Below are positions 27,297 through 39,440 of a DNA stretch of 64,000 nt, in pieces. A program made the translations under genes and the position numbers. This DNA is from Anthoceros angustus. Lineage: Eukaryota > Plantae > Anthocerotophyta. The DNA lies in the NCBI GenBank assembly GCA_010909165.1, contig MU008185.1, positions 248,001 to 312,000 of the forward strand. Direction: 5' to 3'. Position 1 is the stretch's first letter. Each line of letters begins with the position of its first letter. The notes beneath the pieces were generated by a model. The model did no database searches. It was given only the letters and a program-made list of their open reading frames with translations, and was not told where the DNA came from.

Positions 27297-28429
27297 TGGC
27301 TGCACCCAAAGGTCCAAGACCTCAACGGCAGGGCCTTATACATGGTGGTTCACTAAAAAATCCATACACCAGGATTGATCGACGAGCGGCGGGGTCAGGA
27401 ATCCTGCCAGGTCAGGATCAGGCTAGTCTTCTGCGGAAGCGTGTTGCAGCATGTCACGGCCGCTTGTGACGTGCCACAGGCTGGTTGTTGTCGCATGCTG
27501 CAGTCGGACACGGTGAGACACTACACAGTTGGAACGTCCCTGTCAGGATGAAGTCTGGAGTGACCAGCAACATTACCTAACGTGGTCTCCAGATGGCTGT
27601 TGTTGTCGTCATTGTCCACCTGAATTTGGGGACAAACCGATCTCAAAGTTCGAGGCTTAACGAGGGACAGATCTAGAAACACATTCCTCATCAAAGGCCC
27701 ATCAAAGGAATCTATTGAGAAGAAAGTAGCGATTTGAATGCAAGCAGCAGGGGCTAGGTGCTTCTCGACTCTCCACTGTCCGTGACTCGGTGTTTCTATC
27801 CTACTGGGTGCAGCTTCTAGACTCATCATTGTCCCCAAGACGTTTCTTATGGACCCTCCATCGTCCCTACTGACTGGCGTTTACCCCAATTCCACCCTCT
27901 TTCCAACTGTGATGCAGTTCCTTCTCGTTTTCCTTAGTCGACAACGTTCTATGAGAAGTCAAAGAGCTATTCCGTTCGGCAGGTTTTGGAAAGCGAAGGA
28001 CAGGAAGTCGTTGCTCTTGCAACACATGTATGACAGAGCACGCAACGTGAACGTTAGAAAGGGTACCCCAGGGTGCATCGCTGATGGGTAGGTACACACA
28101 AGTGACAAGAACACTGAAAATACTATCAAAAGAGTCCAACGTGAGTTGCTGATGAGTACACACAGCAGTTAAGAACACTGGAGATATTACGAAACGAGCA
28201 AGGCAAGAATGCCCACAAGCACGAGAGTCTTACACAGCCATAGCATGATTCTGGGCGATACAGCTTACCACACGCTACAACGTTCACTCGGTAAGCTCTC
28301 CATTTGTGCTCTCCATCTAGCTAAAACGCTGGCCCCCTTATTTATACGGAGAAGACGTCTCAGAAGCCAGTGTACCATCCCAAAGATCGTCAGCAGGGTG
28401 CAGGTTTTGTGTTTTGTGAAGACTTCAAA

Positions 28430-29062: not shown

Positions 29063-29599
29063 GTGCGAGCAATCACAGCTTGATGACGTTGGGCGATGGC
29101 CCAGGCCGCTCTAGCACAGCTGATCAGAGTAGCAGGTCCCAGGAGACGTGGGAGCTGCAGGCGATGGAGATGGAGAGCTGAATGCAAGCCAGCGTTATAT
29201 ACACGCTGTGGTAGAGACTGGTGTTTCCAGGTGGAATCCATGGTCCAAGAACTAACGAATTTGACTATATAATATTAAAGAAGATGAATTGACGTGGTAT
29301 TCCTTACGAGCGTTTCCCCCGCGTTGGTGTACGAGGTTGACGTGGCATTTCGTATTTGCGTACGATAAGGAGACGGGGCCCACATGGCGCCGGTAGGTTG
29401 CTTCTGCATCCACGTTGGAAGTCAGTTGCTTCCGTCTTGGAAGTCAGGACTTGAATAAAATTCTTCTTCTTCCGTCTTGAGTGTGATATGCTTTGAAGTC
29501 TGCAGTGTAGAGCCCAGCTGGATTATCTAAAGCATAGAGGGGAATAGCTGAAGAGGAGCACGTTTCAAATTGACTAACTTTGACGGTCCGTGTTCCAGT

Positions 29600-29915
29600 C
29601 TTCCTTCAAGCTTCTCTCGTTCCTTCCTTCAACCATATTCCTTCCTTTCTTCAACAAAACTTCTTCCTTCCTTCCTTCCACCAAACTTCTTTCTTCCTTC
29701 CTTCAACCAAACTTCTTCCTTCCTTCCTTCAACCATATTTTTTACATTTTTTACTCCAATCAAACTTCCTCCTTTGCTCAATCAAACTTCCTTCCTTCAA
29801 TCCAACTTCTTTCTTCCTTCCTTCCTTCAACCAAACTTCTTCCTTCCTTCCTTCAACCAAACTCCCTCCTTCCTTCTTCCAAACTTCTCAACCCTTCAAC
29901 CAAACTTTTTTCTTT
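29600..29915. repeat. Pyrimidine-rich minisatellite (unit ~ttccttccttcaaccaaacttc)
   Basis: About ten degenerate 21-29 bp units with almost no G on the + strand. Confidence 0.85.
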
Positions 29916-30782
29916 CAAAGAATATATATTTCAATAAAATATTTTTTTTGAAAACTTTAAAATGAAGATCTCAAAATATCATTCTCAGCAGGAGCACAAA
30001 CAGAATCAGATCATATCTGGGAGCAAGAGTAACAACAAACACGTGGAACCTGCAGAGAAACTACGAAAAGCAACCCCCACCGGCACCCACAAAAAAGAAA
30101 ACCTGCCAAGCAACCAGGTAATGCTGCTAAAGGTACGCGGATTGAAAGGTATCGCTCTTTCACTTATGATAGAACGTTGTGGACTAAAGAGAATGGAAAG
30201 GACCTACATTGCAGTTGGAAAGAGGATGGAGATGGAATTGGACTAAACGCCAATCAACTTGGACAGTGCAGTGGACAAGGACTCCAACAGCATAGTTCTC
30301 CACATTAGGTTTGGTTGGTGACTCCAGACTTCATACTGACTTTGCTCTTTCCTGATTGGCTCTGTATTCATCCACCGCTTTGTTTCTGTCTCTCCACTGT
30401 CCTTGCTGGCTGGCATTCGTCCCAATTCCATGCTCATTCCAAAGGATCAGAAGGCCTTTCCTTTTTTCTTAAGTCATTAACGTTCGTTCTTGCACCTACT
30501 TTTGGGAGGTTCGGGAACGTGATGGAGACGAACTATTTCTCCAGGGATTCAATAGAGCACGCAACTTTGTTTGGTGCCTAGGCTTGCGCGTGTAGACAGG
30601 GCCACGAACAACACTTGCGGTAAAGGGAATCACCCGCAGCTTCTGATGCCTCCTTGCCTTTACTCTTGGAAAGCTTCTCCGAAGCTGTGAATGTGGCAAC
30701 TTGAACAGTTAGAACTGTGTCTGCACTCGAGAACTGATAAAAGCGTTTGATGGCTAAGTTCATGATGCAATGTCTCTCTACC

Positions 30783-33700
30783 CTAGGCCTGCCGTCCAGC
30801 GTTTCTTCTAGGTCTTTTTCTTGTGAGAGCATTCTGGATACGTCTCGCTTTGTCTTGGCTTTCCCAGGATGTTTTCTGGATAGATATGTTCTCCAGAACG
30901 TTGTGTGGCAGAGACCTCATCAAGTCCTGGAACATTTCGTCGTCCAGTCCGTCCCAGCCATCCAACACCAGCGTCTTGATGCTGCGGTTGTTCTCCAACC
31001 CTTGGAAAAACGCCTTGGTGAACCTACATGGACCAAAGGGCTTTCTAAACTCAAGCCGAAGCTCCTGAATAGCCTTGCACCCTTGCAGAATCGTGATGAG
31101 CATAGGATCCATGTCGTCATCATGCGAATGATGTGAGTGAAATACGCCGAGTTTGGTGATACTGCTGTTTCCACGGAGTGCTTTCAATCCGCGTGTGACG
31201 AAGAAGCTGGCAAGCCCGAGCTCTTTGAGAGCACGGTTGGAGCGCAACACGCGAGCCAGGGCTTCCCCCAGCCCTGGCTCCACTGCCTGCTGGCCACCCG
31301 GACACAAGAGAACAAGCTCTGTGACGGAGCGATTAAAAGCCACAGGAAGATTTTGAGCCTCATGACTCCTCGCCGGATCCAGCGTCACACCACGCCCTGG
31401 GCTCTGACATACTGATGAAGACTTACAAGCAGCGTCGTCCCACCACTTTTTCAGCGTTTTCATGGGAAATCCCTCCTTCTTCTTCTTGTTGATGGGGGCC
31501 CAAGACAAGTCATCACGCCACACCAAAGCTTCAAGCAGTGGAATGATGAACATGGGCGCTGGCAGCTTTTCATTCCGGGGCATCAAATCTCCGATTCTAA
31601 GCCCAGTCAGTGTGGTGGTGTGCGCCAGGGCCTTTGCGATCAGCTCAGCTCCTGCCTCGTCCATGCCAATTTCGGAAATCCAGAGACCCCGGATGGTGAG
31701 CGAGTTGGTGAGGATGTCGGCCAAGTGTTGCGCCCCTACAGCATTCCCAATGTCGTTCCCACAGAGACCCAATATGGACAGGACTGAACTGCGCCTCACA
31801 TTGCGCCGAAGGGCTGCAGCGATGTCACCCAGTCCTTGTGCACTCAATCCCACATATTGCAAATCCAGGACGCACAATGAGCGATAAGATCTCTCTATGA
31901 CGGCAGTCAGTGCCTGCACGCAGGCGGCGGTGGCCCCAAAGCCAATGTACCCACACAAATCCAGCTGCTGGAGCACAAGGTTGTGTTGCAACCCTGACAA
32001 GAGTGCCAACGCCTCTTCCTGCCTCACGCTGTAACCCGTCCTTCGCTGAGGATTCAGATGAACGTTCTTCAGCGTGCGGCATTTGCCGATGGCTGTCAGC
32101 AGACGCAAGCGAACGTCCCCCTCCCACTCCCCGCGGTGTTGGCACTTCCCGTACGCGTCCTGGCAGTTGCAATCGAAGTAGCTCCCCCACAAATCCACAG
32201 CTGGGAGTGTTTGCAACCGTCGCGAGTCGGACTCCAGTGCTGCGAGCAACCTCAGCAACCGCGGGTTCACTCTCTCACCTCTCAGAGCTTTCTTCAGAAG
32301 TTCGGTTTTGCCTTCCTTTTCCCACGAGGTGCCCTCGATAGAGATGTGCTCCAGGTTGGTGTTGGTGGACAAGGATTGTACCAGGTCTTCAAACATTTCG
32401 TCGTCCAGGCCATCCCAGCCATCCAACACCATCCTCTTGACGCTAAGGTTGCGACCCAACCCACGGAACAACCTCTTGGTGAACTTGCTCCGCCCGTAGG
32501 GTTTAAAAAACCTGAGCTGCAGCACTTGCAGCCTTATGCACCTCTGCAGGATTGACATCAGCAGAGGGTCCACCTCCTCGTCATCCAGGCCATGGTGGTG
32601 ATCCAGCGTTAATGCCGTGATGCTGCTGTTGTTAGCCAGTGCCCACAACCCGCACGTCACAAAAAAGCTCGTCACCTTGAGGAACTTCAAAGTTGTGTTG
32701 GAGCGAAGCATGCCAGCCACAGCTTCTGCCAAACCACCCTCCACAGCGCTCTCTTTCGTTTTCCGTATTGAACTGCTTGCCTTCTTAAGCGATACCCTTC
32801 CAGCCCTATCCTTATCCTTGCCTCTGCCTCCTAGCAGCCCGGTTACCCGAAGCGAGAGCTGGGTGATGGATTTGTTGTATTTGCATGAATGACATACCCA
32901 CTCCAGCTCCAACTCCGACAATGACTCCGACGAGGAAGACTCACCAGGGCTCAAGGCTCTCAAGAGAGGAACCAACATGGCCGCCTGCTCAGGATGCTTC
33001 TCCCGGTCATATCCTAGCTCAAGCCTGTCCAGTGTGGTGCTGCGGGCCACAGCGTGCGCAACTACTGTGGCGCCCGAATAATCCATTCCTACATCGCGCA
33101 GCCCCAAGGTTCGCAGTGCACGCGCATGCGTAAGGATGTGGGCTACGTGCTGCGCCCCGGTAGCTCTTATGATGTCGTTGTTATCAACACGCAACACGCG
33201 GAGAACCGAGCCGCTGTTGTCCCGCAAGGCTGCGGAAATATGGCCCAGTCCTTCCACACTCAGCCCGAGGCCCCGCATATCCAGATAATCCAATCTGCGA
33301 CTGGGTCGCACCACGGCAGCAGCCAGTTTAATGCACGCTTCCGTGGTCCCGAATCCTTGGAACCCGCAAAAGCTCAGGCTTTCCAGTTCTGGATTGCGCT
33401 TCAACCCCTTCAGCAGCGCCGTTGCCTCCACGTCCCTCACGCTGTACATCCCAAGCACAAACAAGGGATTCAGATGGATGGTCCTCAGGCTCCTGCAGTT
33501 GCCGATAGCGCTCATGATGCGCAAGCGCAGCTCCCCCTTGGACTCGCCCGACGCTTCATGTTCGCGCTCCAGGAAGTAGGTGCCCCAGGAACCCGCAGGA
33601 GGAGGAAGAGCGGACAGGGTCGGGGAATGGGACTCGAGGCTAGCCAGCAGGTTCGCCAGCTCGGCAGAAAGATCTAGAGCCGTCTCCGCCATAGCCGAAT

Positions 33701-35132
33701 CTTCGCTCAGTCCGTGGAGTCTCATGTTTGACGTACTTGGGACCGTGATCTGCAGAAGCAGTTGCCGGATCTCATCACGTTTTGCTGTGCACTCCTGGTC
33801 ACATCGTGCCCACTGCAGAACTTGGTCGAGCTTTTCCAGAGCATCCCCGTATTCACCCTCCGTGGCGTGCTGCAGGGCCTCCTTCCGATGCCTCAACCTG
33901 CGGTCATGAAACACGTCTTCCTGTTCCGGGAACGTCTTGAACAGTCGCGTCCGCACATTGATATCATCCACCACAATACCAAACTCTGGCAGGCCTTTAT
34001 CAAATGGAGACACGGTCACATGGTGGTCGATCACTGTCCATCGGTCATACGTCCTTCCATCGCTGCATTTCACGGGATCGCACATCAGCTGATCTGTGAT
34101 GGGATCTTCAAACCATCGGTCTTCTTCACCATCCTGTGCAGAAGACTGCCTCTTTTCCAGCCTCCTAGTCCTCCGCTCTTCCAAATTTGCCAACACCTAC
34201 AAATGTGCCAGACACAACGCATTGAGACATAACTCCACTCATCACAGCTGACCTAAACAATTCAAAACCCTAAACAATTCAAAACAACTTTAAATTCGAA
34301 CTTGAAGGAAACACTGTTCGAACTTTGTTGAAGGAAACACTGAAGAGTCTCACATCTGCAAAGAACTTCTCCGATTCCGAAGTCTGAGGCTCCGTGCTCC
34401 GGGTTAGGGTAATCGCAGTGTCCAAGTCTATGTTCCGATCCTGCCCGGTAGCTGCCACTCCGTCCAGCACTGGCTGCAGCAACGATTTGAGCTCGGCACG
34501 CAGATCCAGTATGCTCGCATTCACCTGATGCACGTCATCCCTCCACTCCTTCCAAGCGCTAGCACTATCTGCCAGCGCATCTGTCAAAGCCCCTTGCACT
34601 CGGGATAGATTGGCTCGGAACTCCTCCTGCTTGCTCTGCTCCTCGATCACCACATCGAAAATGATGATCTGAAGCTTGGTTTGGAAAGACGTTACCACCT
34701 CCTCCCTTATCCTCTTCAACTTGTCGTAGATTCTGCTCACGCTCCAAACGGACTTGATGTAGCCACGGTCCAGACACACTTGCACGTACTTCGTAGCCCT
34801 TTCCAAATCCTCCTTCAAAGCCCCTGCTCCAACACGACAGCAACGCATCATTCACTAGTGCACATCGATATCCCGCCAGCCAAGAAATCAATATCATCCA
34901 AACTAAAAAGCAGCATCTGAATTTCCATACCAGCAGCCCACAGAGCGCTGTTGCTCTGAGGAGTCCTCTCCTGGAGCGAAAGCAGGTCCAGTTTGAGGTT
35001 GGTGATGAAGACGCTGAGCTCCCCGACAATCTCGTCGTTGTTGCGCTTCTTCAAGCACAATTCCTTCACACTCCACAGGGCCTCTACCAGCGTGTAGCCA
35101 GCCCCTATCGCGGCCAAGGTTAGATCCGCCAT
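30783..35132 (-). CDS. ~1360 aa protein: N-terminal four-helix-bundle (MLKL/RPW8/UND-like), coiled coil, U-box, TPR-like helices and two RI-type LRR modules
   Basis: Exons 35132-34931 (202 nt), 34823-34354 (470 nt) and 34196-30783 are joined by GT-AG introns of 107 and 157 nt with matching phases (1, 0). U-box FEDPITDQLMCDPVKCSDGRTYDR; TPR-like EALQHATEGEYGDALEKLDQVL; LRRs such as LRTLGLRDVGMDYSGATVVAHAVARSTTLDRLEL. Confidence 0.85.
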
Positions 35133-36989: not shown

Positions 36990-39440
36990 GCATGGTTTAG
37001 GCGGGGGTTTAGGCAACCGATTTGGCGGGCGGGCGGGCTGCGGTGGCGGCGAGGCGGCGAGGCAAGGCGGGAGGCGGAGGCGGGAGGCGGCGAGGCGGCG
37101 AGGCGGCGAGGCGGGCGGGCAGGCGGCGAGGCGGCGAGCGGGCGGCGGGGCGCGGCGCGCGGCGGGCGGGCAGGCGGCGGCGGCGAGCGGGCGGCGAGCC
37201 CACCGCCACGGACGGGGCAGGCGGCGGCGAGGCGGCGAGGCGGGGCGGGTTTTCGCGGACCGGCGAGAAGGGCGGGCGGGCTGCGGTGGCGGCGAGGGAC
37301 GGAGGCGGGAGGCGGGCGGCGGCGGCGGCGGCGAGGGACGGAGGCGGGCAGGCGGCGAGGCGGCGAGGGGCGAGGCGGGCGGGCGGCGGGGCGAGGGACG
37401 GACGAGGCGCGGCCTTCACTGGGTGACGGACGGCGGCCAACCGCAGTAAGGAGAGGCGGCGAGGCGGCGAGGCGGCGAGGCGGGGCAGGCGGCGAGGCGG
37501 CGAGGCGGCGAGGCGGCGAGGCAAGGCGGGAAGGCCGGGGAGGCGGAGGAGGAAGGCGGGCGGCGAGGGACGGAGGCGGGGCAAGGCGGGCGGCAGGCGG
37601 CGAGGCGCCACGGCAACGGAGGCGGGCGTGGCGAGCGGGCGGGCGGCGAGCGGGCGGCGAGGAGGCGCCACGGTAGCCCTCCCCATCCTTGCACCAAGCC
37701 GCAACTAACCTCGCCCCTCATTCGGGTCGCGCCACGGCAACGGAGGCGGGCAGGCGGCGGCGAGCCCACCGCCACGGACGGGCGGAGGCGGGCGGCGAGG
37801 CGGCGAGGGGCGGGTTTAGGCGGCGAGGCAAGGCGGGCAAGGCGGGCGGGCGGCGGCGAGGCAAGGCGGAGGAGGGGCTGCGGCGAGGCGGAGGCGGGCA
37901 GGCGGGCGGAGGCGGGAGGCGAGGCGGCGAGGAGGCGGCGAGCGGGCGGCGAGGGACGGACGAGGCGCGGCCTTCACTGGGTGACGGACGGCGGCGAGGC
38001 GGCCACCGCAGTAAGGAGAGGCGGCGAGGCGGCGAGGCGGCGAGGCGGGGCGAGGCGGCGAGGCGGCGAGGCGGCGAGGCGGGGAAGGCCGGGGAGGCGG
38101 AGGAAGGCGGGCAGGCGGCGAGGCGGGGCGCGGGCGGCGGCGAGGCGCCACGGGCAACGGAGGCGGCGAGCGGGCGGGCGGCGGGCGGAGGAGGAGGAGG
38201 CACGTGGGCCCTCCCCATCCTTGCACCAAGCCGCAACTAACCTCGCCCCTCATTCCTTCCCCGCCCATGGTGATGCCGAATTGTTTGATGCTCATTTCTT
38301 TGCAAACGGCCGACACGCAGATGGTACTGGTGCCACCGCAGTATTATTGTAGGCTTCCTGCGGTTGTGGGCGGGATGGTGCACCGCCCACCCTCTCCTCC
38401 TCACATGCCGCAGCCGCAGCGCGCCTCGAGCGGCGGGGCGCCACGCTGGCAGGCGCCCTCATTGTGGCGGCGGGGCGCGGCGAGCGGGCGGGCGGCGAGC
38501 GGGCGGCGAGGCGGGCGGCGGGCAGGCGGCGGGCGGGCTGCGGTGGCGGCGGGCGGAGAAGGGCGGGCTGCGTTGAGGCAAAACACGGGCGGAGGCGGAG
38601 GAGGGGCTGCGGTGGCGGCGAGGGGCGGAGGCGGGCAGGCGGGCGGGCGGGCGGGGCGAGGCGGGCGGGCTGCGGTGGCGGCGAGGAGGCGGGCCTTCAC
38701 TCAGGTGCGGGCGGGCAGGCGGCGAGGCGGCGGGCGGGCGGGCGGGCGGGGCGGGCGGGCGGGAGGCGGGAGGCGGGCGGGCAGGCGGCGAGGGGGCAGG
38801 CGGGCGGCGGCGAGGCGGGCAGGCGGGCGGGCGTGGCGAGCGGGCGGCGAGCGGCGGCGAGGCGGCGAGTGCAGTCCTCCCCATCCTTGCACCAAGCCGC
38901 AACTAACCTCGTCCTCATGGTGGGCATGAATCTGCGTGCAAGGAGAGGCGGGCAGGCGAGCCCACCGCCACTTGCATGTGTGGGGCGGCGGGCGGGGCGG
39001 CGAGGCGGCGAGGCGGCGGGCGGCGAGGCAAGGCGGGGCGGAGAAGGGCGGGGCGGCGGCGAGGCAAGGCGGAGGAGGGGCTGCGGCGAGGCGGAGGCGG
39101 GCAGGCGGGGCAAGGCGGCGAGGAGGCGGCGAGGCGGCGGCCCTACCGGGCCGAGGGACGGACGAGGCGCGGCCTTCACTGGGTGACGGACGGCGGCGAG
39201 GCGGCCACCGCAGTAAGGAGAGGCGGCGAGGCGGCGAGGCGGCGAGGCGGGGCGAGGCGGCGAGGCGGCGAGGCGGCGAGGCGGGGAAGGCCGGGGAGGC
39301 GGAGGAAGGCGGGCGGGCAGGCGGCGAGGCGGGCGGGCGGGGCGGCGGCGAGGCGCCACGGGCAACGGAGGCGGCGAGGCGGGCAGGCGGGGCGGCGAGG
39401 AGGCGGGGCGGCGAGGAGGCGGGCGGGCTGCGGTGGCCCC
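36990..39440. repeat. G-rich array of GGCGAGGC/GGCG units with duplicated unique cassettes
   Basis: An 8-mer ggcgaggc run interleaved with cassette ccccatccttgcaccaagccgcaactaacctcg (x4: ~37681, 38213, 38880, 39441) and gggacggacgaggcgcggccttcactgggtgacggac (x3). Confidence 0.9.

What the first reader, a model, noticed from the sequence alone, without database searches (positions are those of the whole stretch)
30783..35132. Unusual immune-like architecture: four-helix bundle + U-box + TPR-like + tandem LRR, without NB-ARC
Seen: three ORFs that the track lists separately splice cleanly into one ~1360 aa gene. The N-terminus MADLTLAAIGAGYTLVEALWSVKELC...ALKEDLERATKYVQVCLDRGYIKSVWSVSRIYDKLKRIREEV has the L..A..hV..C...S.h..hW....Y..KL pattern. 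It is followed by a U-box, TPR-like helices and ribonuclease-inhibitor-type LRRs; no P-loop is visible. Established: MLKL/RPW8-like four-helix bundles execute cell death, and a related domain (UND) precedes the U-box in PUB-ARM ligases. Inference: a PUB-like E3 ligase whose ARM repeats are replaced by a large LRR sensor, or a sensor-ubiquitin ligase-executor fusion. I do not recognise this architecture from seed plants.
Basis: partly seen in the sequence, partly recalled or inferred. Interest (0 to 1): 0.82.

Follow-up and report, generated by a model that had tools for sequence, protein, structure and literature searches.

The report
U-box ubiquitin ligase with LRR arm
An intact three-exon gene in a non-seed land plant joins a four-helix-bundle head and a U-box ubiquitin-ligase core, a cassette shared by many fern, moss and liverwort proteins, to two leucine-rich-repeat horseshoes where its relatives carry ARM, SPRY or kinase tails; this is a new variant of a known ligase type, and its function is untested.

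Summary
Three minus-strand ORFs join through two GT-AG introns into a 1361-aa protein. Fern and liverwort homologues align without gaps across both junctions and share the MADL start. The U-box-to-LRR fusion lies inside one 1137-codon exon, so it needs no splicing assumption.

Domain order:
- An N-terminal helical domain (~224 aa). A homologue model gives a four-helix bundle plus brace-like helices.
- A U-box that passes the Pfam threshold, followed by a conserved helical hairpin.
- Two tandem ~480-aa ribonuclease-inhibitor-type LRR modules.
- No Walker A motif and no NB-ARC.

The head-U-box-hairpin cassette is a family found in liverworts, a moss and ferns. Its tails are swapped among SPRY, kinase, ARM, ZZ and ubiquitin-like domains. 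None of the 150 best hits among 1.84 billion proteins joins it to LRRs. The LRR module's closest relatives sit in bryophyte LRR-Roc-COR proteins.

Best reading (0.6): a PUB-like E3 ligase that uses LRRs as its target-binding arm. A cell-death executor role for the head is untested (~0.15). No RNA evidence was available.

The scan had flagged sister cassette fusions (EF-hand, ARM) elsewhere in this genome, but not this gene.

The parts
34931..35132 (-). Exon 1: start codon and residues 1-67 plus the first base of codon 68. These are helices 1-2 of the N-terminal bundle.
   Evidence: ORF and sequence. Homologues start at the same MADL/MAEL. L001 matches at 60% identity over residues 7-68.
34824..34930 (-). 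Intron 1 (107 nt, GT..AG). A second in-frame AG lies 3 nt upstream (34828-27), forming a NAGNAG-like tandem acceptor that would add one Ala.
   Evidence: The homologue alignment fits the 1361-aa form without a gap. GC is 0.44 against 0.55 in the CDS.
34354..34823 (-). Exon 2: residues 68-224. These are helices 3-4 of the bundle, the brace-like helices, and the conserved EKFFAD motif that leads into the U-box.
   Evidence: The family alignment A1 has an invariant W. The protein-language-model neighbours of this exon are MLKL_N/DUF7792/RPW8/MCAfunc clusters, score 0.80.
34197..34353 (-). Intron 2 (157 nt, GTGAGA..TTGTAG, phase 0). It contains a perfect 17-nt tandem duplication at 34252-34285.
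   Evidence: GC is 0.38. Homologues are gapless across the junction.
33912..34124 (-). U-box domain (about residues 249-319 of the protein).
   Evidence: Pfam PF04564, E 2.2e-6, 28.2 bits against a cut-off of 21.4. The closest solved sequence is the UBE4B U-box 2kr4, E 0.002, with DPI..M.DPV..G and SP.D aligned.
33741..33911 (-). Conserved stretch that always follows this U-box in the family (about residues 320-376). Its sequence pattern suggests a helical, TPR-like hairpin, but it was not folded.
   Evidence: It is co-conserved with the U-box in all 62 cassette hits for which a joint U-box-plus-hairpin range was extracted, at 45-59% identity. No Pfam TPR hit.
32259..33683 (-). LRR module 1 (residues 396-870): an RI-type horseshoe of about 13 strand-helix repeats with its own N-terminal cap and a C-terminal TSWE motif.
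   Evidence: AlphaFold2 model on alignment A3: pLDDT 84.3, pTM 0.86, regular strand/helix alternation. Foldseek: ribonuclease inhibitor 1a4y E 7.4e-13, NLRP9 E 6.6e-13. Pfam LRR_6 hits 8 of 17 homologous modules.
30786..32258 (-). LRR module 2 (residues 871-1361): a tandem duplicate of module 1.
   Evidence: BLASTP of module 1 against module 2: 43% identity over 491 columns, E 3e-111. A DNA direct repeat with 1461-nt spacing marks the duplication (D5). dN/dS is about 0.37.
30783..30785 (-). Stop codon.
   Evidence: Module 2 ends at the same point as homologous modules.

Best explanation
The gene encodes a single-chain U-box E3 ubiquitin ligase of the 'helical head + U-box' kind (PUB-like). The U-box recruits a ubiquitin-charged E2 enzyme. 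The two RI-type LRR horseshoes take the place that ARM, SPRY or kinase domains hold in its relatives, and act as the arm that binds the protein to be ubiquitinated or a ligand that regulates the ligase. The N-terminal four-helix bundle with brace-like helices is the counterpart of the UND/MCAfunc/MLKL_N-type head of plant U-box proteins. It most likely serves regulation, oligomerisation or membrane or partner docking.

Shown: the gene structure, the domain order, the U-box, the RI-type LRR fold, the tandem duplication, the cassette family with its swapped tails, and the absence of an NTPase.

Inferred: ligase activity, LRRs as the substrate or ligand arm, and the role of the head.
For: - The gene is intact and its junctions are backed by homologues.
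- The U-box passes the Pfam threshold and aligns with the E4B U-box, including DPI and SP.D.
- The cassette of head, U-box and hairpin recurs in Adiantum, Riccia, Marchantia, Calypogeia and Ceratodon, with SPRY, kinase, ARM, ZZ and ubiquitin-like tails. This is the pattern expected of a constant catalytic core with exchangeable target-binding arms.
- In a FastTree of the cassette (no support values), this gene's nearest neighbour is a SPRY-tailed gene at 59% identity with the same intron positions.
- LRR module 1 folds as a ribonuclease-inhibitor-type horseshoe. The fold hits also include the LRR arms of E3 substrate receptors (FBXL2, COI1, D3).
- Both LRR modules have stayed open, with dN/dS about 0.37 since the duplication.
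- The literature describes MCAfunc(UND)+U-box(+Arm) as the ancestral streptophyte architecture (PMC8049495).
Against: - No RNA evidence for this gene: none was listed, and the one run laid gave only short 90-95% matches to LRR paralogues.
- No orthologue with the same U-box-LRR order was found, so conservation of the fusion is unknown.
- The U-box hit covers only profile positions 5-41 of 73.
- The head was modelled on a homologue with 32-34% identity to this gene's two head exons, not on this protein.
- Ligase activity and LRR ligands are untested.
Confidence: 0.6

Rival explanations
1. Sensor-ligase-executor. The LRRs sense a pathogen or danger molecule. This releases the N-terminal four-helix bundle, which oligomerises and permeabilises membranes or conducts Ca2+, as in MLKL, CC/RPW8-type NLR heads or MCA. 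The U-box tunes stability. The protein would be an NB-ARC-free LRR immune receptor.
For: - Pfam MLKL_N hits 3 of 18 family heads below threshold. The one I inspected is in register: P0031 residues 23-115 against profile 13-107, E 5e-4.
- The language-model neighbours are MLKL_N/RPW8/MCAfunc/PUB10_N clusters of Streptophyta.
- Plant MLKL heads are annotated as MCAfunc in the literature (bioRxiv 10.64898/2026.08.07.743466).
- The same LRR module type sits in LRR-Roc-COR proteins.
- The cassette also occurs C-terminal to an alpha/beta-hydrolase-NB-ARC in Calypogeia (P0012).
Against: - No family hit reaches a curated threshold.
- The same head type in UND-PUBs and MCA is not known as a death executor.
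- Nothing here tests membrane activity.
- The head sits next to a ligase core in dozens of relatives with non-sensor tails.
Confidence: 0.15
2. A young, lineage-restricted chimera with little or no function: a product of exon or domain shuffling (cassette plus duplicated LRR block) that is not expressed or is on its way to decay.
For: No RNA evidence. No orthologue with the same order in the 1.84-billion-protein library. Repeats and a possible inverted-repeat element flank the gene. Other notes call this assembly noisy.
Against: A 1361-codon frame without a stop. The two LRR modules have diverged to 43-47% identity yet both stay open, with dN/dS about 0.37. The splice sites are canonical and the start matches homologues. 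The CDS keeps high GC3 while the introns do not.
Confidence: 0.12
3. The LRRs are not a target-binding arm. They act as an autoinhibitory or scaffolding domain, as the N-terminal LRRs of ROCO proteins are thought to, and substrate choice lies in the helical head or the hairpin.
For: The closest LRR relatives are N-terminal modules of LRR-Roc-COR proteins. Cassette-only proteins of 430-510 aa exist, for example in Marchantia (P0004) and Riccia (P0005), so the cassette may work without any tail.
Against: In relatives the tail position is filled by classical protein-binding domains (SPRY, ARM). Two full horseshoes are a large investment for mere autoinhibition.
Confidence: 0.1

Closest known systems
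Uncharacterised head-U-box-hairpin cassette proteins of ferns, mosses and liverworts (for example Adiantum KAI5057293.1, Riccia KAL3694366.1, Marchantia Mp3g13280)
   Same: Homologous N-terminal domain (E down to 2e-29), U-box and hairpin at 42-59% identity. The order and start are the same, and in L001 the intron positions are too.
   Different: Their tails are SPRY, kinase, ARM, ZZ, ubiquitin-like or absent. None of the 150 best hits has LRRs after the cassette.
Class II plant U-box proteins (UND-U-box-ARM: PUB13, ARC1, PUB17)
   Same: A helical N-terminal domain, then a U-box, then a repeat domain that binds targets. The UND equals the MCAfunc domain in the literature (PMC8049495; PMC11263811). 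MCAfunc and PUB10_N clusters are among the head's language-model neighbours.
   Different: LRR in place of ARM. The U-box is closer to the UFD2/E4B type (DPI rather than CPI). An extra conserved hairpin follows the U-box. No Pfam MCAfunc or PUB10_N hit.
LRR-bearing E3 ligases: F-box-LRR receptors (FBXL2, TIR1/COI1, D3); by my own knowledge also LRSAM1 (LRR-RING) and bacterial IpaH/SspH (LRR-NEL)
   Same: An LRR solenoid serves as the target- or ligand-binding arm of a ubiquitin ligase. FBXL2, COI1 and D3 appear among the fold matches of LRR module 1.
   Different: Those use F-box/SCF, RING or NEL catalytic parts, not a U-box, and none has a four-helix-bundle head. LRSAM1 and IpaH were not tested here.
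MLKL, CC and RPW8-type NLR heads (four-helix-bundle executors)
   Same: An up-down four-helix bundle followed by brace-like helices at the very N-terminus. There are weak sequence and language-model links to MLKL_N/RPW8.
   Different: No pseudokinase or NB-ARC partner. A U-box follows instead. No curated threshold is met, and death activity is untested.
Bryophyte LRR-Roc-COR (ROCO) proteins (for example Marchantia Mp1g27080)
   Same: The ~475-aa LRR module, including its cap and C-terminal motif, is the closest relative of both modules here at 30-31% identity to the sequenced example P0156.
   Different: No Roc GTPase or COR domain here. The module is duplicated and attached to a ligase core.

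Membership tests
U-box E3 ligases (Pfam PF04564) | U-box profile match above the curated threshold | tested here: met
   28.2 bits against a cut-off of 21.4, E 2.2e-6, exon-3 residues 29-65, profile positions 5-41 of 73.
U-box E3 ligases (Pfam PF04564) | Conserved core and E2-contact positions (hydrophobic residue after D/C-P, M.DPV, G.T, and Pro of the second loop) | tested here: met
   The HMMER alignment to the UBE4B U-box (2kr4) aligns DPI/DPL, M.DPV, G and SP.D. The same positions are conserved in the cassette alignment consensus.
U-box E3 ligases (Pfam PF04564) | E2-dependent ubiquitin transfer | not testable with these tools
   Needs an in vitro ubiquitination assay.
Class II PUBs (UND-U-box-ARM) | N-terminal UND/MCAfunc domain (Pfam MCAfunc PF19584 or PUB10_N PF25368) | tested here: inconclusive
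   No hit at E<=1 for this gene's two head exons, and neither family is among the 25 families shown for the 18 aligned heads. MCAfunc and PUB10_N clusters appear among the language-model neighbours at 0.86-0.78. A profile-profile test was not possible.
Class II PUBs (UND-U-box-ARM) | C-terminal ARM repeats | tested here: not met
   No Arm hit. The tail is two RI-type LRR modules.
MLKL_N / HeLo / CC / RPW8 four-helix-bundle heads | Four-helix up-down bundle at the N-terminus | tested here: met
MLKL_N / HeLo / CC / RPW8 four-helix-bundle heads | Family profile match above threshold (PF22215, PF05659, Rx_N) | tested here: not met
   The best is MLKL_N at 20.0 bits against a cut-off of 27, in homologue P0031. 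There is nothing in the window's own exons.
MLKL_N / HeLo / CC / RPW8 four-helix-bundle heads | Membrane permeabilisation or cell death on release | not testable with these tools
   Needs expression assays.
NLR immune receptors | Central NB-ARC or NACHT NTPase with a P-loop | tested here: not met
   No NB-ARC or NACHT hit. No Walker A motif anywhere in the 1361 aa.
RI-type LRR proteins (Pfam LRR_6) | Horseshoe of ~28-aa strand-helix repeats | tested here: met
   The model has pLDDT 84.3 with about 13 strand/helix units. Ribonuclease inhibitor at E 7.4e-13, TM 0.53-0.55. Pfam LRR_6 hits 8 of 17 homologous modules but not this sequence at E<=0.1.
ROCO proteins | Roc GTPase plus COR domain | tested here: not met
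   No Roc or COR hit in this protein. They are present in the LRR-module relatives P0156, P0158, P0066 and L004.

The most novel reading that the evidence does not exclude
The gene is one member of a modular, NB-ARC-independent surveillance system of non-seed plants. A constant 'four-helix-bundle executor + U-box' cassette is wired to interchangeable sensors: LRR here; SPRY, kinase, ARM and, per other notes on this genome, EF-hands elsewhere. Ligand binding by the LRRs unleashes the bundle to permeabilise membranes or conduct Ca2+, as MLKL or CC-NLR heads do, and the U-box sets the threshold by self-ubiquitination.
Probability: 0.12. Interest if true: 0.9.

Novelty: new variant of a known kind. 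Interest (0 to 1): 0.55.

Why it matters
Plant U-box ligases are known almost only with ARM, kinase, WD40 or TPR partners. Plant intracellular LRR sensing is known almost only through NB-ARC receptors or F-box proteins.

This work adds a clean, single-exon fusion of a U-box core to two RI-type LRR horseshoes. It also recognises that the core is a conserved bryophyte-fern cassette with a CC/MLKL-like head and freely swapped tails. Together these point to a domain-shuffling family that seed-plant models do not show.

It gives a concrete set of constructs to test two questions: whether UND/MCAfunc-type heads next to U-boxes are regulators or executors, and what RI-type LRR modules (shared with ROCO proteins) bind in early-diverging land plants.

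Tried and rejected
- Word-index protein search with exon 3 found nothing. Restricted to the U-box region, it found one Calypogeia ARM-U-box protein. With the ARM region of P0029 it returned only liverwort proteins and no seed-plant PUB, so I could not build a UND alignment for a profile-profile test.
- ESM Atlas feature search with the whole of exon 3 gave no usable hit.
- RNA evidence: one run was listed, holding next to none of the sampled words. Laying it gave only short 90-95% pieces on LRR regions, no joints, and nothing on exons 1-2.
- Foldseek on the helical head against the PDB gave nothing at E<=0.001. The Atlas shape search gave only TM<0.5 rows. A profile of the head against PDB sequences matched only designed coiled coils.
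- A mixed alignment of cassette and LRR fragments (A2) misaligned the LRR rows and was dropped. LRR module 1 was folded on its own alignment.
- I looked for a U-box-LRR orthologue in the Logan contigs that hold the best fragments. L001 has the cassette followed by SPRY, L004 has LRR followed by COR, and L002 and L003 are too short to tell.
- TE capture: no terminal repeats bracket the gene. The only inverted repeats lie downstream of it.
- Rfam found nothing in the window.
- I considered whether the 'MADL' start is a MADA-like motif, as in CC-NLR heads. Beyond M-A-D the match to the consensus I recall is poor, and I had no model to test it, so it is left as a lead only.
Full report
**Gene model**

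On the minus strand an ATG at 35132 opens a 202-nt exon that ends before a GT at 34930. Two AG acceptors 3 nt apart (34828-27 and 34825-24) both keep the frame. Exon 2 runs to 34354 and is followed by GTGAGA. A TTGTAG acceptor at 34197 opens exon 3, a single 1137-codon ORF down to the stop at 30783-30785. The joined CDS gives 1361 aa (or 1362 with the upstream acceptor) with no internal stop. The introns are AT-richer (GC 0.44 and 0.38) than the CDS (GC 0.55, GC3 0.66).

No RNA evidence could be obtained. The run search listed one run holding next to none of the stretch's words. Laying it gave only short 90-95% matches on LRR parts, which are evidently paralogues.

The junctions are supported by comparison instead. 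In a MAFFT alignment, 18 relatives pass both junctions without a gap (…WAA|GALKEDLE… and …EKFFAD|VLANLE…), and the closest ones start with the same MADL/MAEL. A genomic contig from another sample (L001) carries the same three exons, split at residues 67/68 and 224/225, at 46-60% identity. The key fusion, U-box to LRR, lies within one exon and so does not depend on any splice call.

**Domains**

- **U-box.** Pfam finds a U-box above its curated threshold at exon-3 residues 29-65 and finds no NB-ARC, NACHT, Arm or TPR. There is no Walker A motif in the whole protein. The closest solved sequence is the UBE4B U-box, with DPI, M.DPV, G and SP.D aligned.
- **Hairpin.** The ~60 residues after the U-box are co-conserved with it in every relative. 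I call this stretch a helical hairpin from its sequence pattern.
- **LRR modules.** The remaining ~965 residues are two tandem modules, 43% identical over 491 columns (E 3e-111). The duplication is also visible as a DNA direct repeat spaced 1461 nt apart. dN/dS between the modules is about 0.37. Module 1 was modelled on an alignment of 17 homologous modules (pLDDT 84.3, pTM 0.86). It shows about 13 regular strand-helix units and matches ribonuclease inhibitor (E 7.4e-13) and NLRP-type LRRs, as well as the LRR arms of FBXL2, COI1 and D3. Pfam LRR_6 hits 8 of the 17 homologous modules but not this sequence.

**Relatives**

An exhaustive HMMER search of exon 3 against 1.84 billion representative proteins gave 722 hits at E<=1e-3. 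I split the 150 best by domain with phmmer:

| Domain content | Hits |
|---|---|
| LRR matches only | 86 |
| U-box plus hairpin only | 42 |
| N-terminal domain plus U-box plus hairpin | 22 |
| U-box and LRR together | 0 |

. A protein with both parts would have outscored all of these. The fusion is therefore absent from that library at this level of similarity. The window's own protein is absent too, so this genome's proteome is apparently not in the library. Close sister species may be unsampled.

The cassette-bearing proteins that carry names come from:
- liverworts (Marchantia, Riccia, Calypogeia),
- a moss (Ceratodon),
- ferns (Adiantum).

No seed plant appeared among the roughly 25 I looked up. 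Their tails are SPRY, protein kinase, ARM, ubiquitin-like and ZZ (the last named by its source record, not scanned here). One Calypogeia protein has alpha/beta-hydrolase, then NB-ARC, then the U-box cassette. In a quick FastTree of the cassette (no support values inspected), this gene pairs with the SPRY-tailed L001 gene.

The LRR module's best full-length relatives are the N-terminal modules of LRR-Roc-COR proteins of bryophytes. The sequenced example P0156 is 30-31% identical.

**The N-terminal domain**

I could not submit this gene's own joined residues 1-224 by reference. I therefore modelled the closest complete homologue (P0027 residues 1-215) on an 18-row family alignment that includes this gene's two exons. 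P0027 matches the joined head at E 6e-28 and is 32-34% identical to the two exons. The model has pLDDT 80.7 and pTM 0.79. Four long helices (2-24, 30-56, 61-90, 96-123) are followed by a helical pair (130-152, 158-183) and two short helices that lead into the U-box.

|---|---|---|
| Rx CC domain | 10.0 | rmsd 2.3 Å, 105 of 107 residues; first among natural proteins |
| Human MLKL executioner domain | 7.7 | 120 residues |
| Sw-5b N-terminal domain | 7.6 | |
| NRG1.1 CC-R | 7.5 | 106 of 109 residues |
| Cbl N-terminal bundle | 7.5 | |
| MLA13 | 6.8 | |
| AtMLKL3 | 6.1 | 171 residues |

Two independent weak lines point the same way:
- Pfam MLKL_N is the family hit by most heads: 3 of 18, all below threshold. 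In the one I inspected (P0031, 23-115 against profile 13-107, E 5e-4) the match is in register.
- The protein-language-model neighbours of P0027 residues 1-215 are all Streptophyta clusters carrying MLKL_N, DUF7792, RPW8, MCAfunc or PUB10_N (scores 0.88-0.78, 187 shared features). This gene's exon 2 returns the same top cluster at 0.80. Scores under 0.9 are leads only.

The literature ties these names together. The MCAfunc domain is the N-terminal domain of PUB13 and PUB45, and MCAfunc+U-box+Arm is described as the ancestral streptophyte arrangement (PMC8049495). Plant MLKL four-helix bundles are annotated as MCAfunc, Cbl-N superfamily or DUF1221 (bioRxiv 10.64898/2026.08.07.743466). UND-U-box-ARM is the class that holds ARC1 and PUB17 (PMC11263811).

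**Interpretation**

The simplest reading is a PUB-like single-chain E3 ligase with three parts: a conserved catalytic cassette, an exchangeable target-binding tail (here LRR), and a head of the UND/MCAfunc/MLKL_N type. I put this at about 0.6.

The more exciting reading is that the head is a death or ion-channel executor released by LRR sensing. It is compatible with the fold and with the company the LRR module keeps. Nothing tests it, and the same head type sits in ordinary PUBs. I put it at about 0.15.

A non-functional young chimera is made less likely by the intact frame and by purifying selection on both LRR copies (about 0.12). LRRs acting as autoinhibitor or scaffold rather than substrate arm is a further option (about 0.1).

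**Novelty**

A full-text search for U-box-LRR phrasings found no paper. The PUB papers I read describe ARM, kinase and other partners but not LRR.

Other first-stage and follow-up notes on this same genome report sister fusions of the same cassette with EF-hands and with ARM. They also report LRR-Roc-COR-caspase genes, one of them 75 kb beyond this window, and one note calls the genome hornwort-like. These are unchecked AI notes. I verified only that this LRR module type occurs in LRR-Roc-COR proteins elsewhere.

I rate the gene a new variant of a known kind: interesting mainly as the entry point to a modular, non-seed-plant family.

Noticed in passing
window 37024-39428: A ~2.4-kb G-rich low-complexity satellite built on GGCGAGGC-like 8-nt units (GC about 0.8, strong G over C skew), 1.9 kb upstream of the gene's start.
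   Followed up: no
window 29568-29912: A CT-rich tandem array (26-nt unit, about 10 copies) 0.9 kb downstream of the stop codon. It creates spurious ORFs in all three plus-strand frames.
   Followed up: no
window 27542-27977 and 30144-30340: Two inverted-repeat pairs (92 nt at 79% and 25 nt at 92% complementarity), 2.2-2.7 kb apart, just downstream of the gene. This may be a small TIR element. It does not bracket the gene.
   Followed up: no
window 34824-34830: A NAGNAG-like tandem acceptor at intron 1 (GAGCAG). Both AGs keep the frame and differ by one Ala. Homologues fit the shorter form.
   Followed up: partly
L001 1983-4374 (Logan SRR33208241 contig): A gene with the same three-exon head-U-box-hairpin cassette (46-60% identity, same intron positions), continued by an exon whose translation looks like a SPRY domain by eye (not scanned). 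It is the nearest relative of the cassette found.
   Followed up: partly
P0012 (Calypogeia fissa CAM6092395.1, 824 aa): Alpha/beta-hydrolase, then NB-ARC, then the same U-box-plus-hairpin cassette at the C-terminus. This is a liverwort NLR-type protein ending in a ligase core instead of LRRs.
   Followed up: no
P0036, P0051, P0111 (Adiantum, Riccia): Head + U-box + hairpin + protein kinase. This is an MLKL-like order (bundle ... kinase) with a U-box inserted between the two.
   Followed up: no
P0001 (Logan, 300 aa): The best-scoring hit holds two consecutive U-box-plus-hairpin units in one predicted product. It may be a tandem cassette or two merged genes.
   Followed up: no
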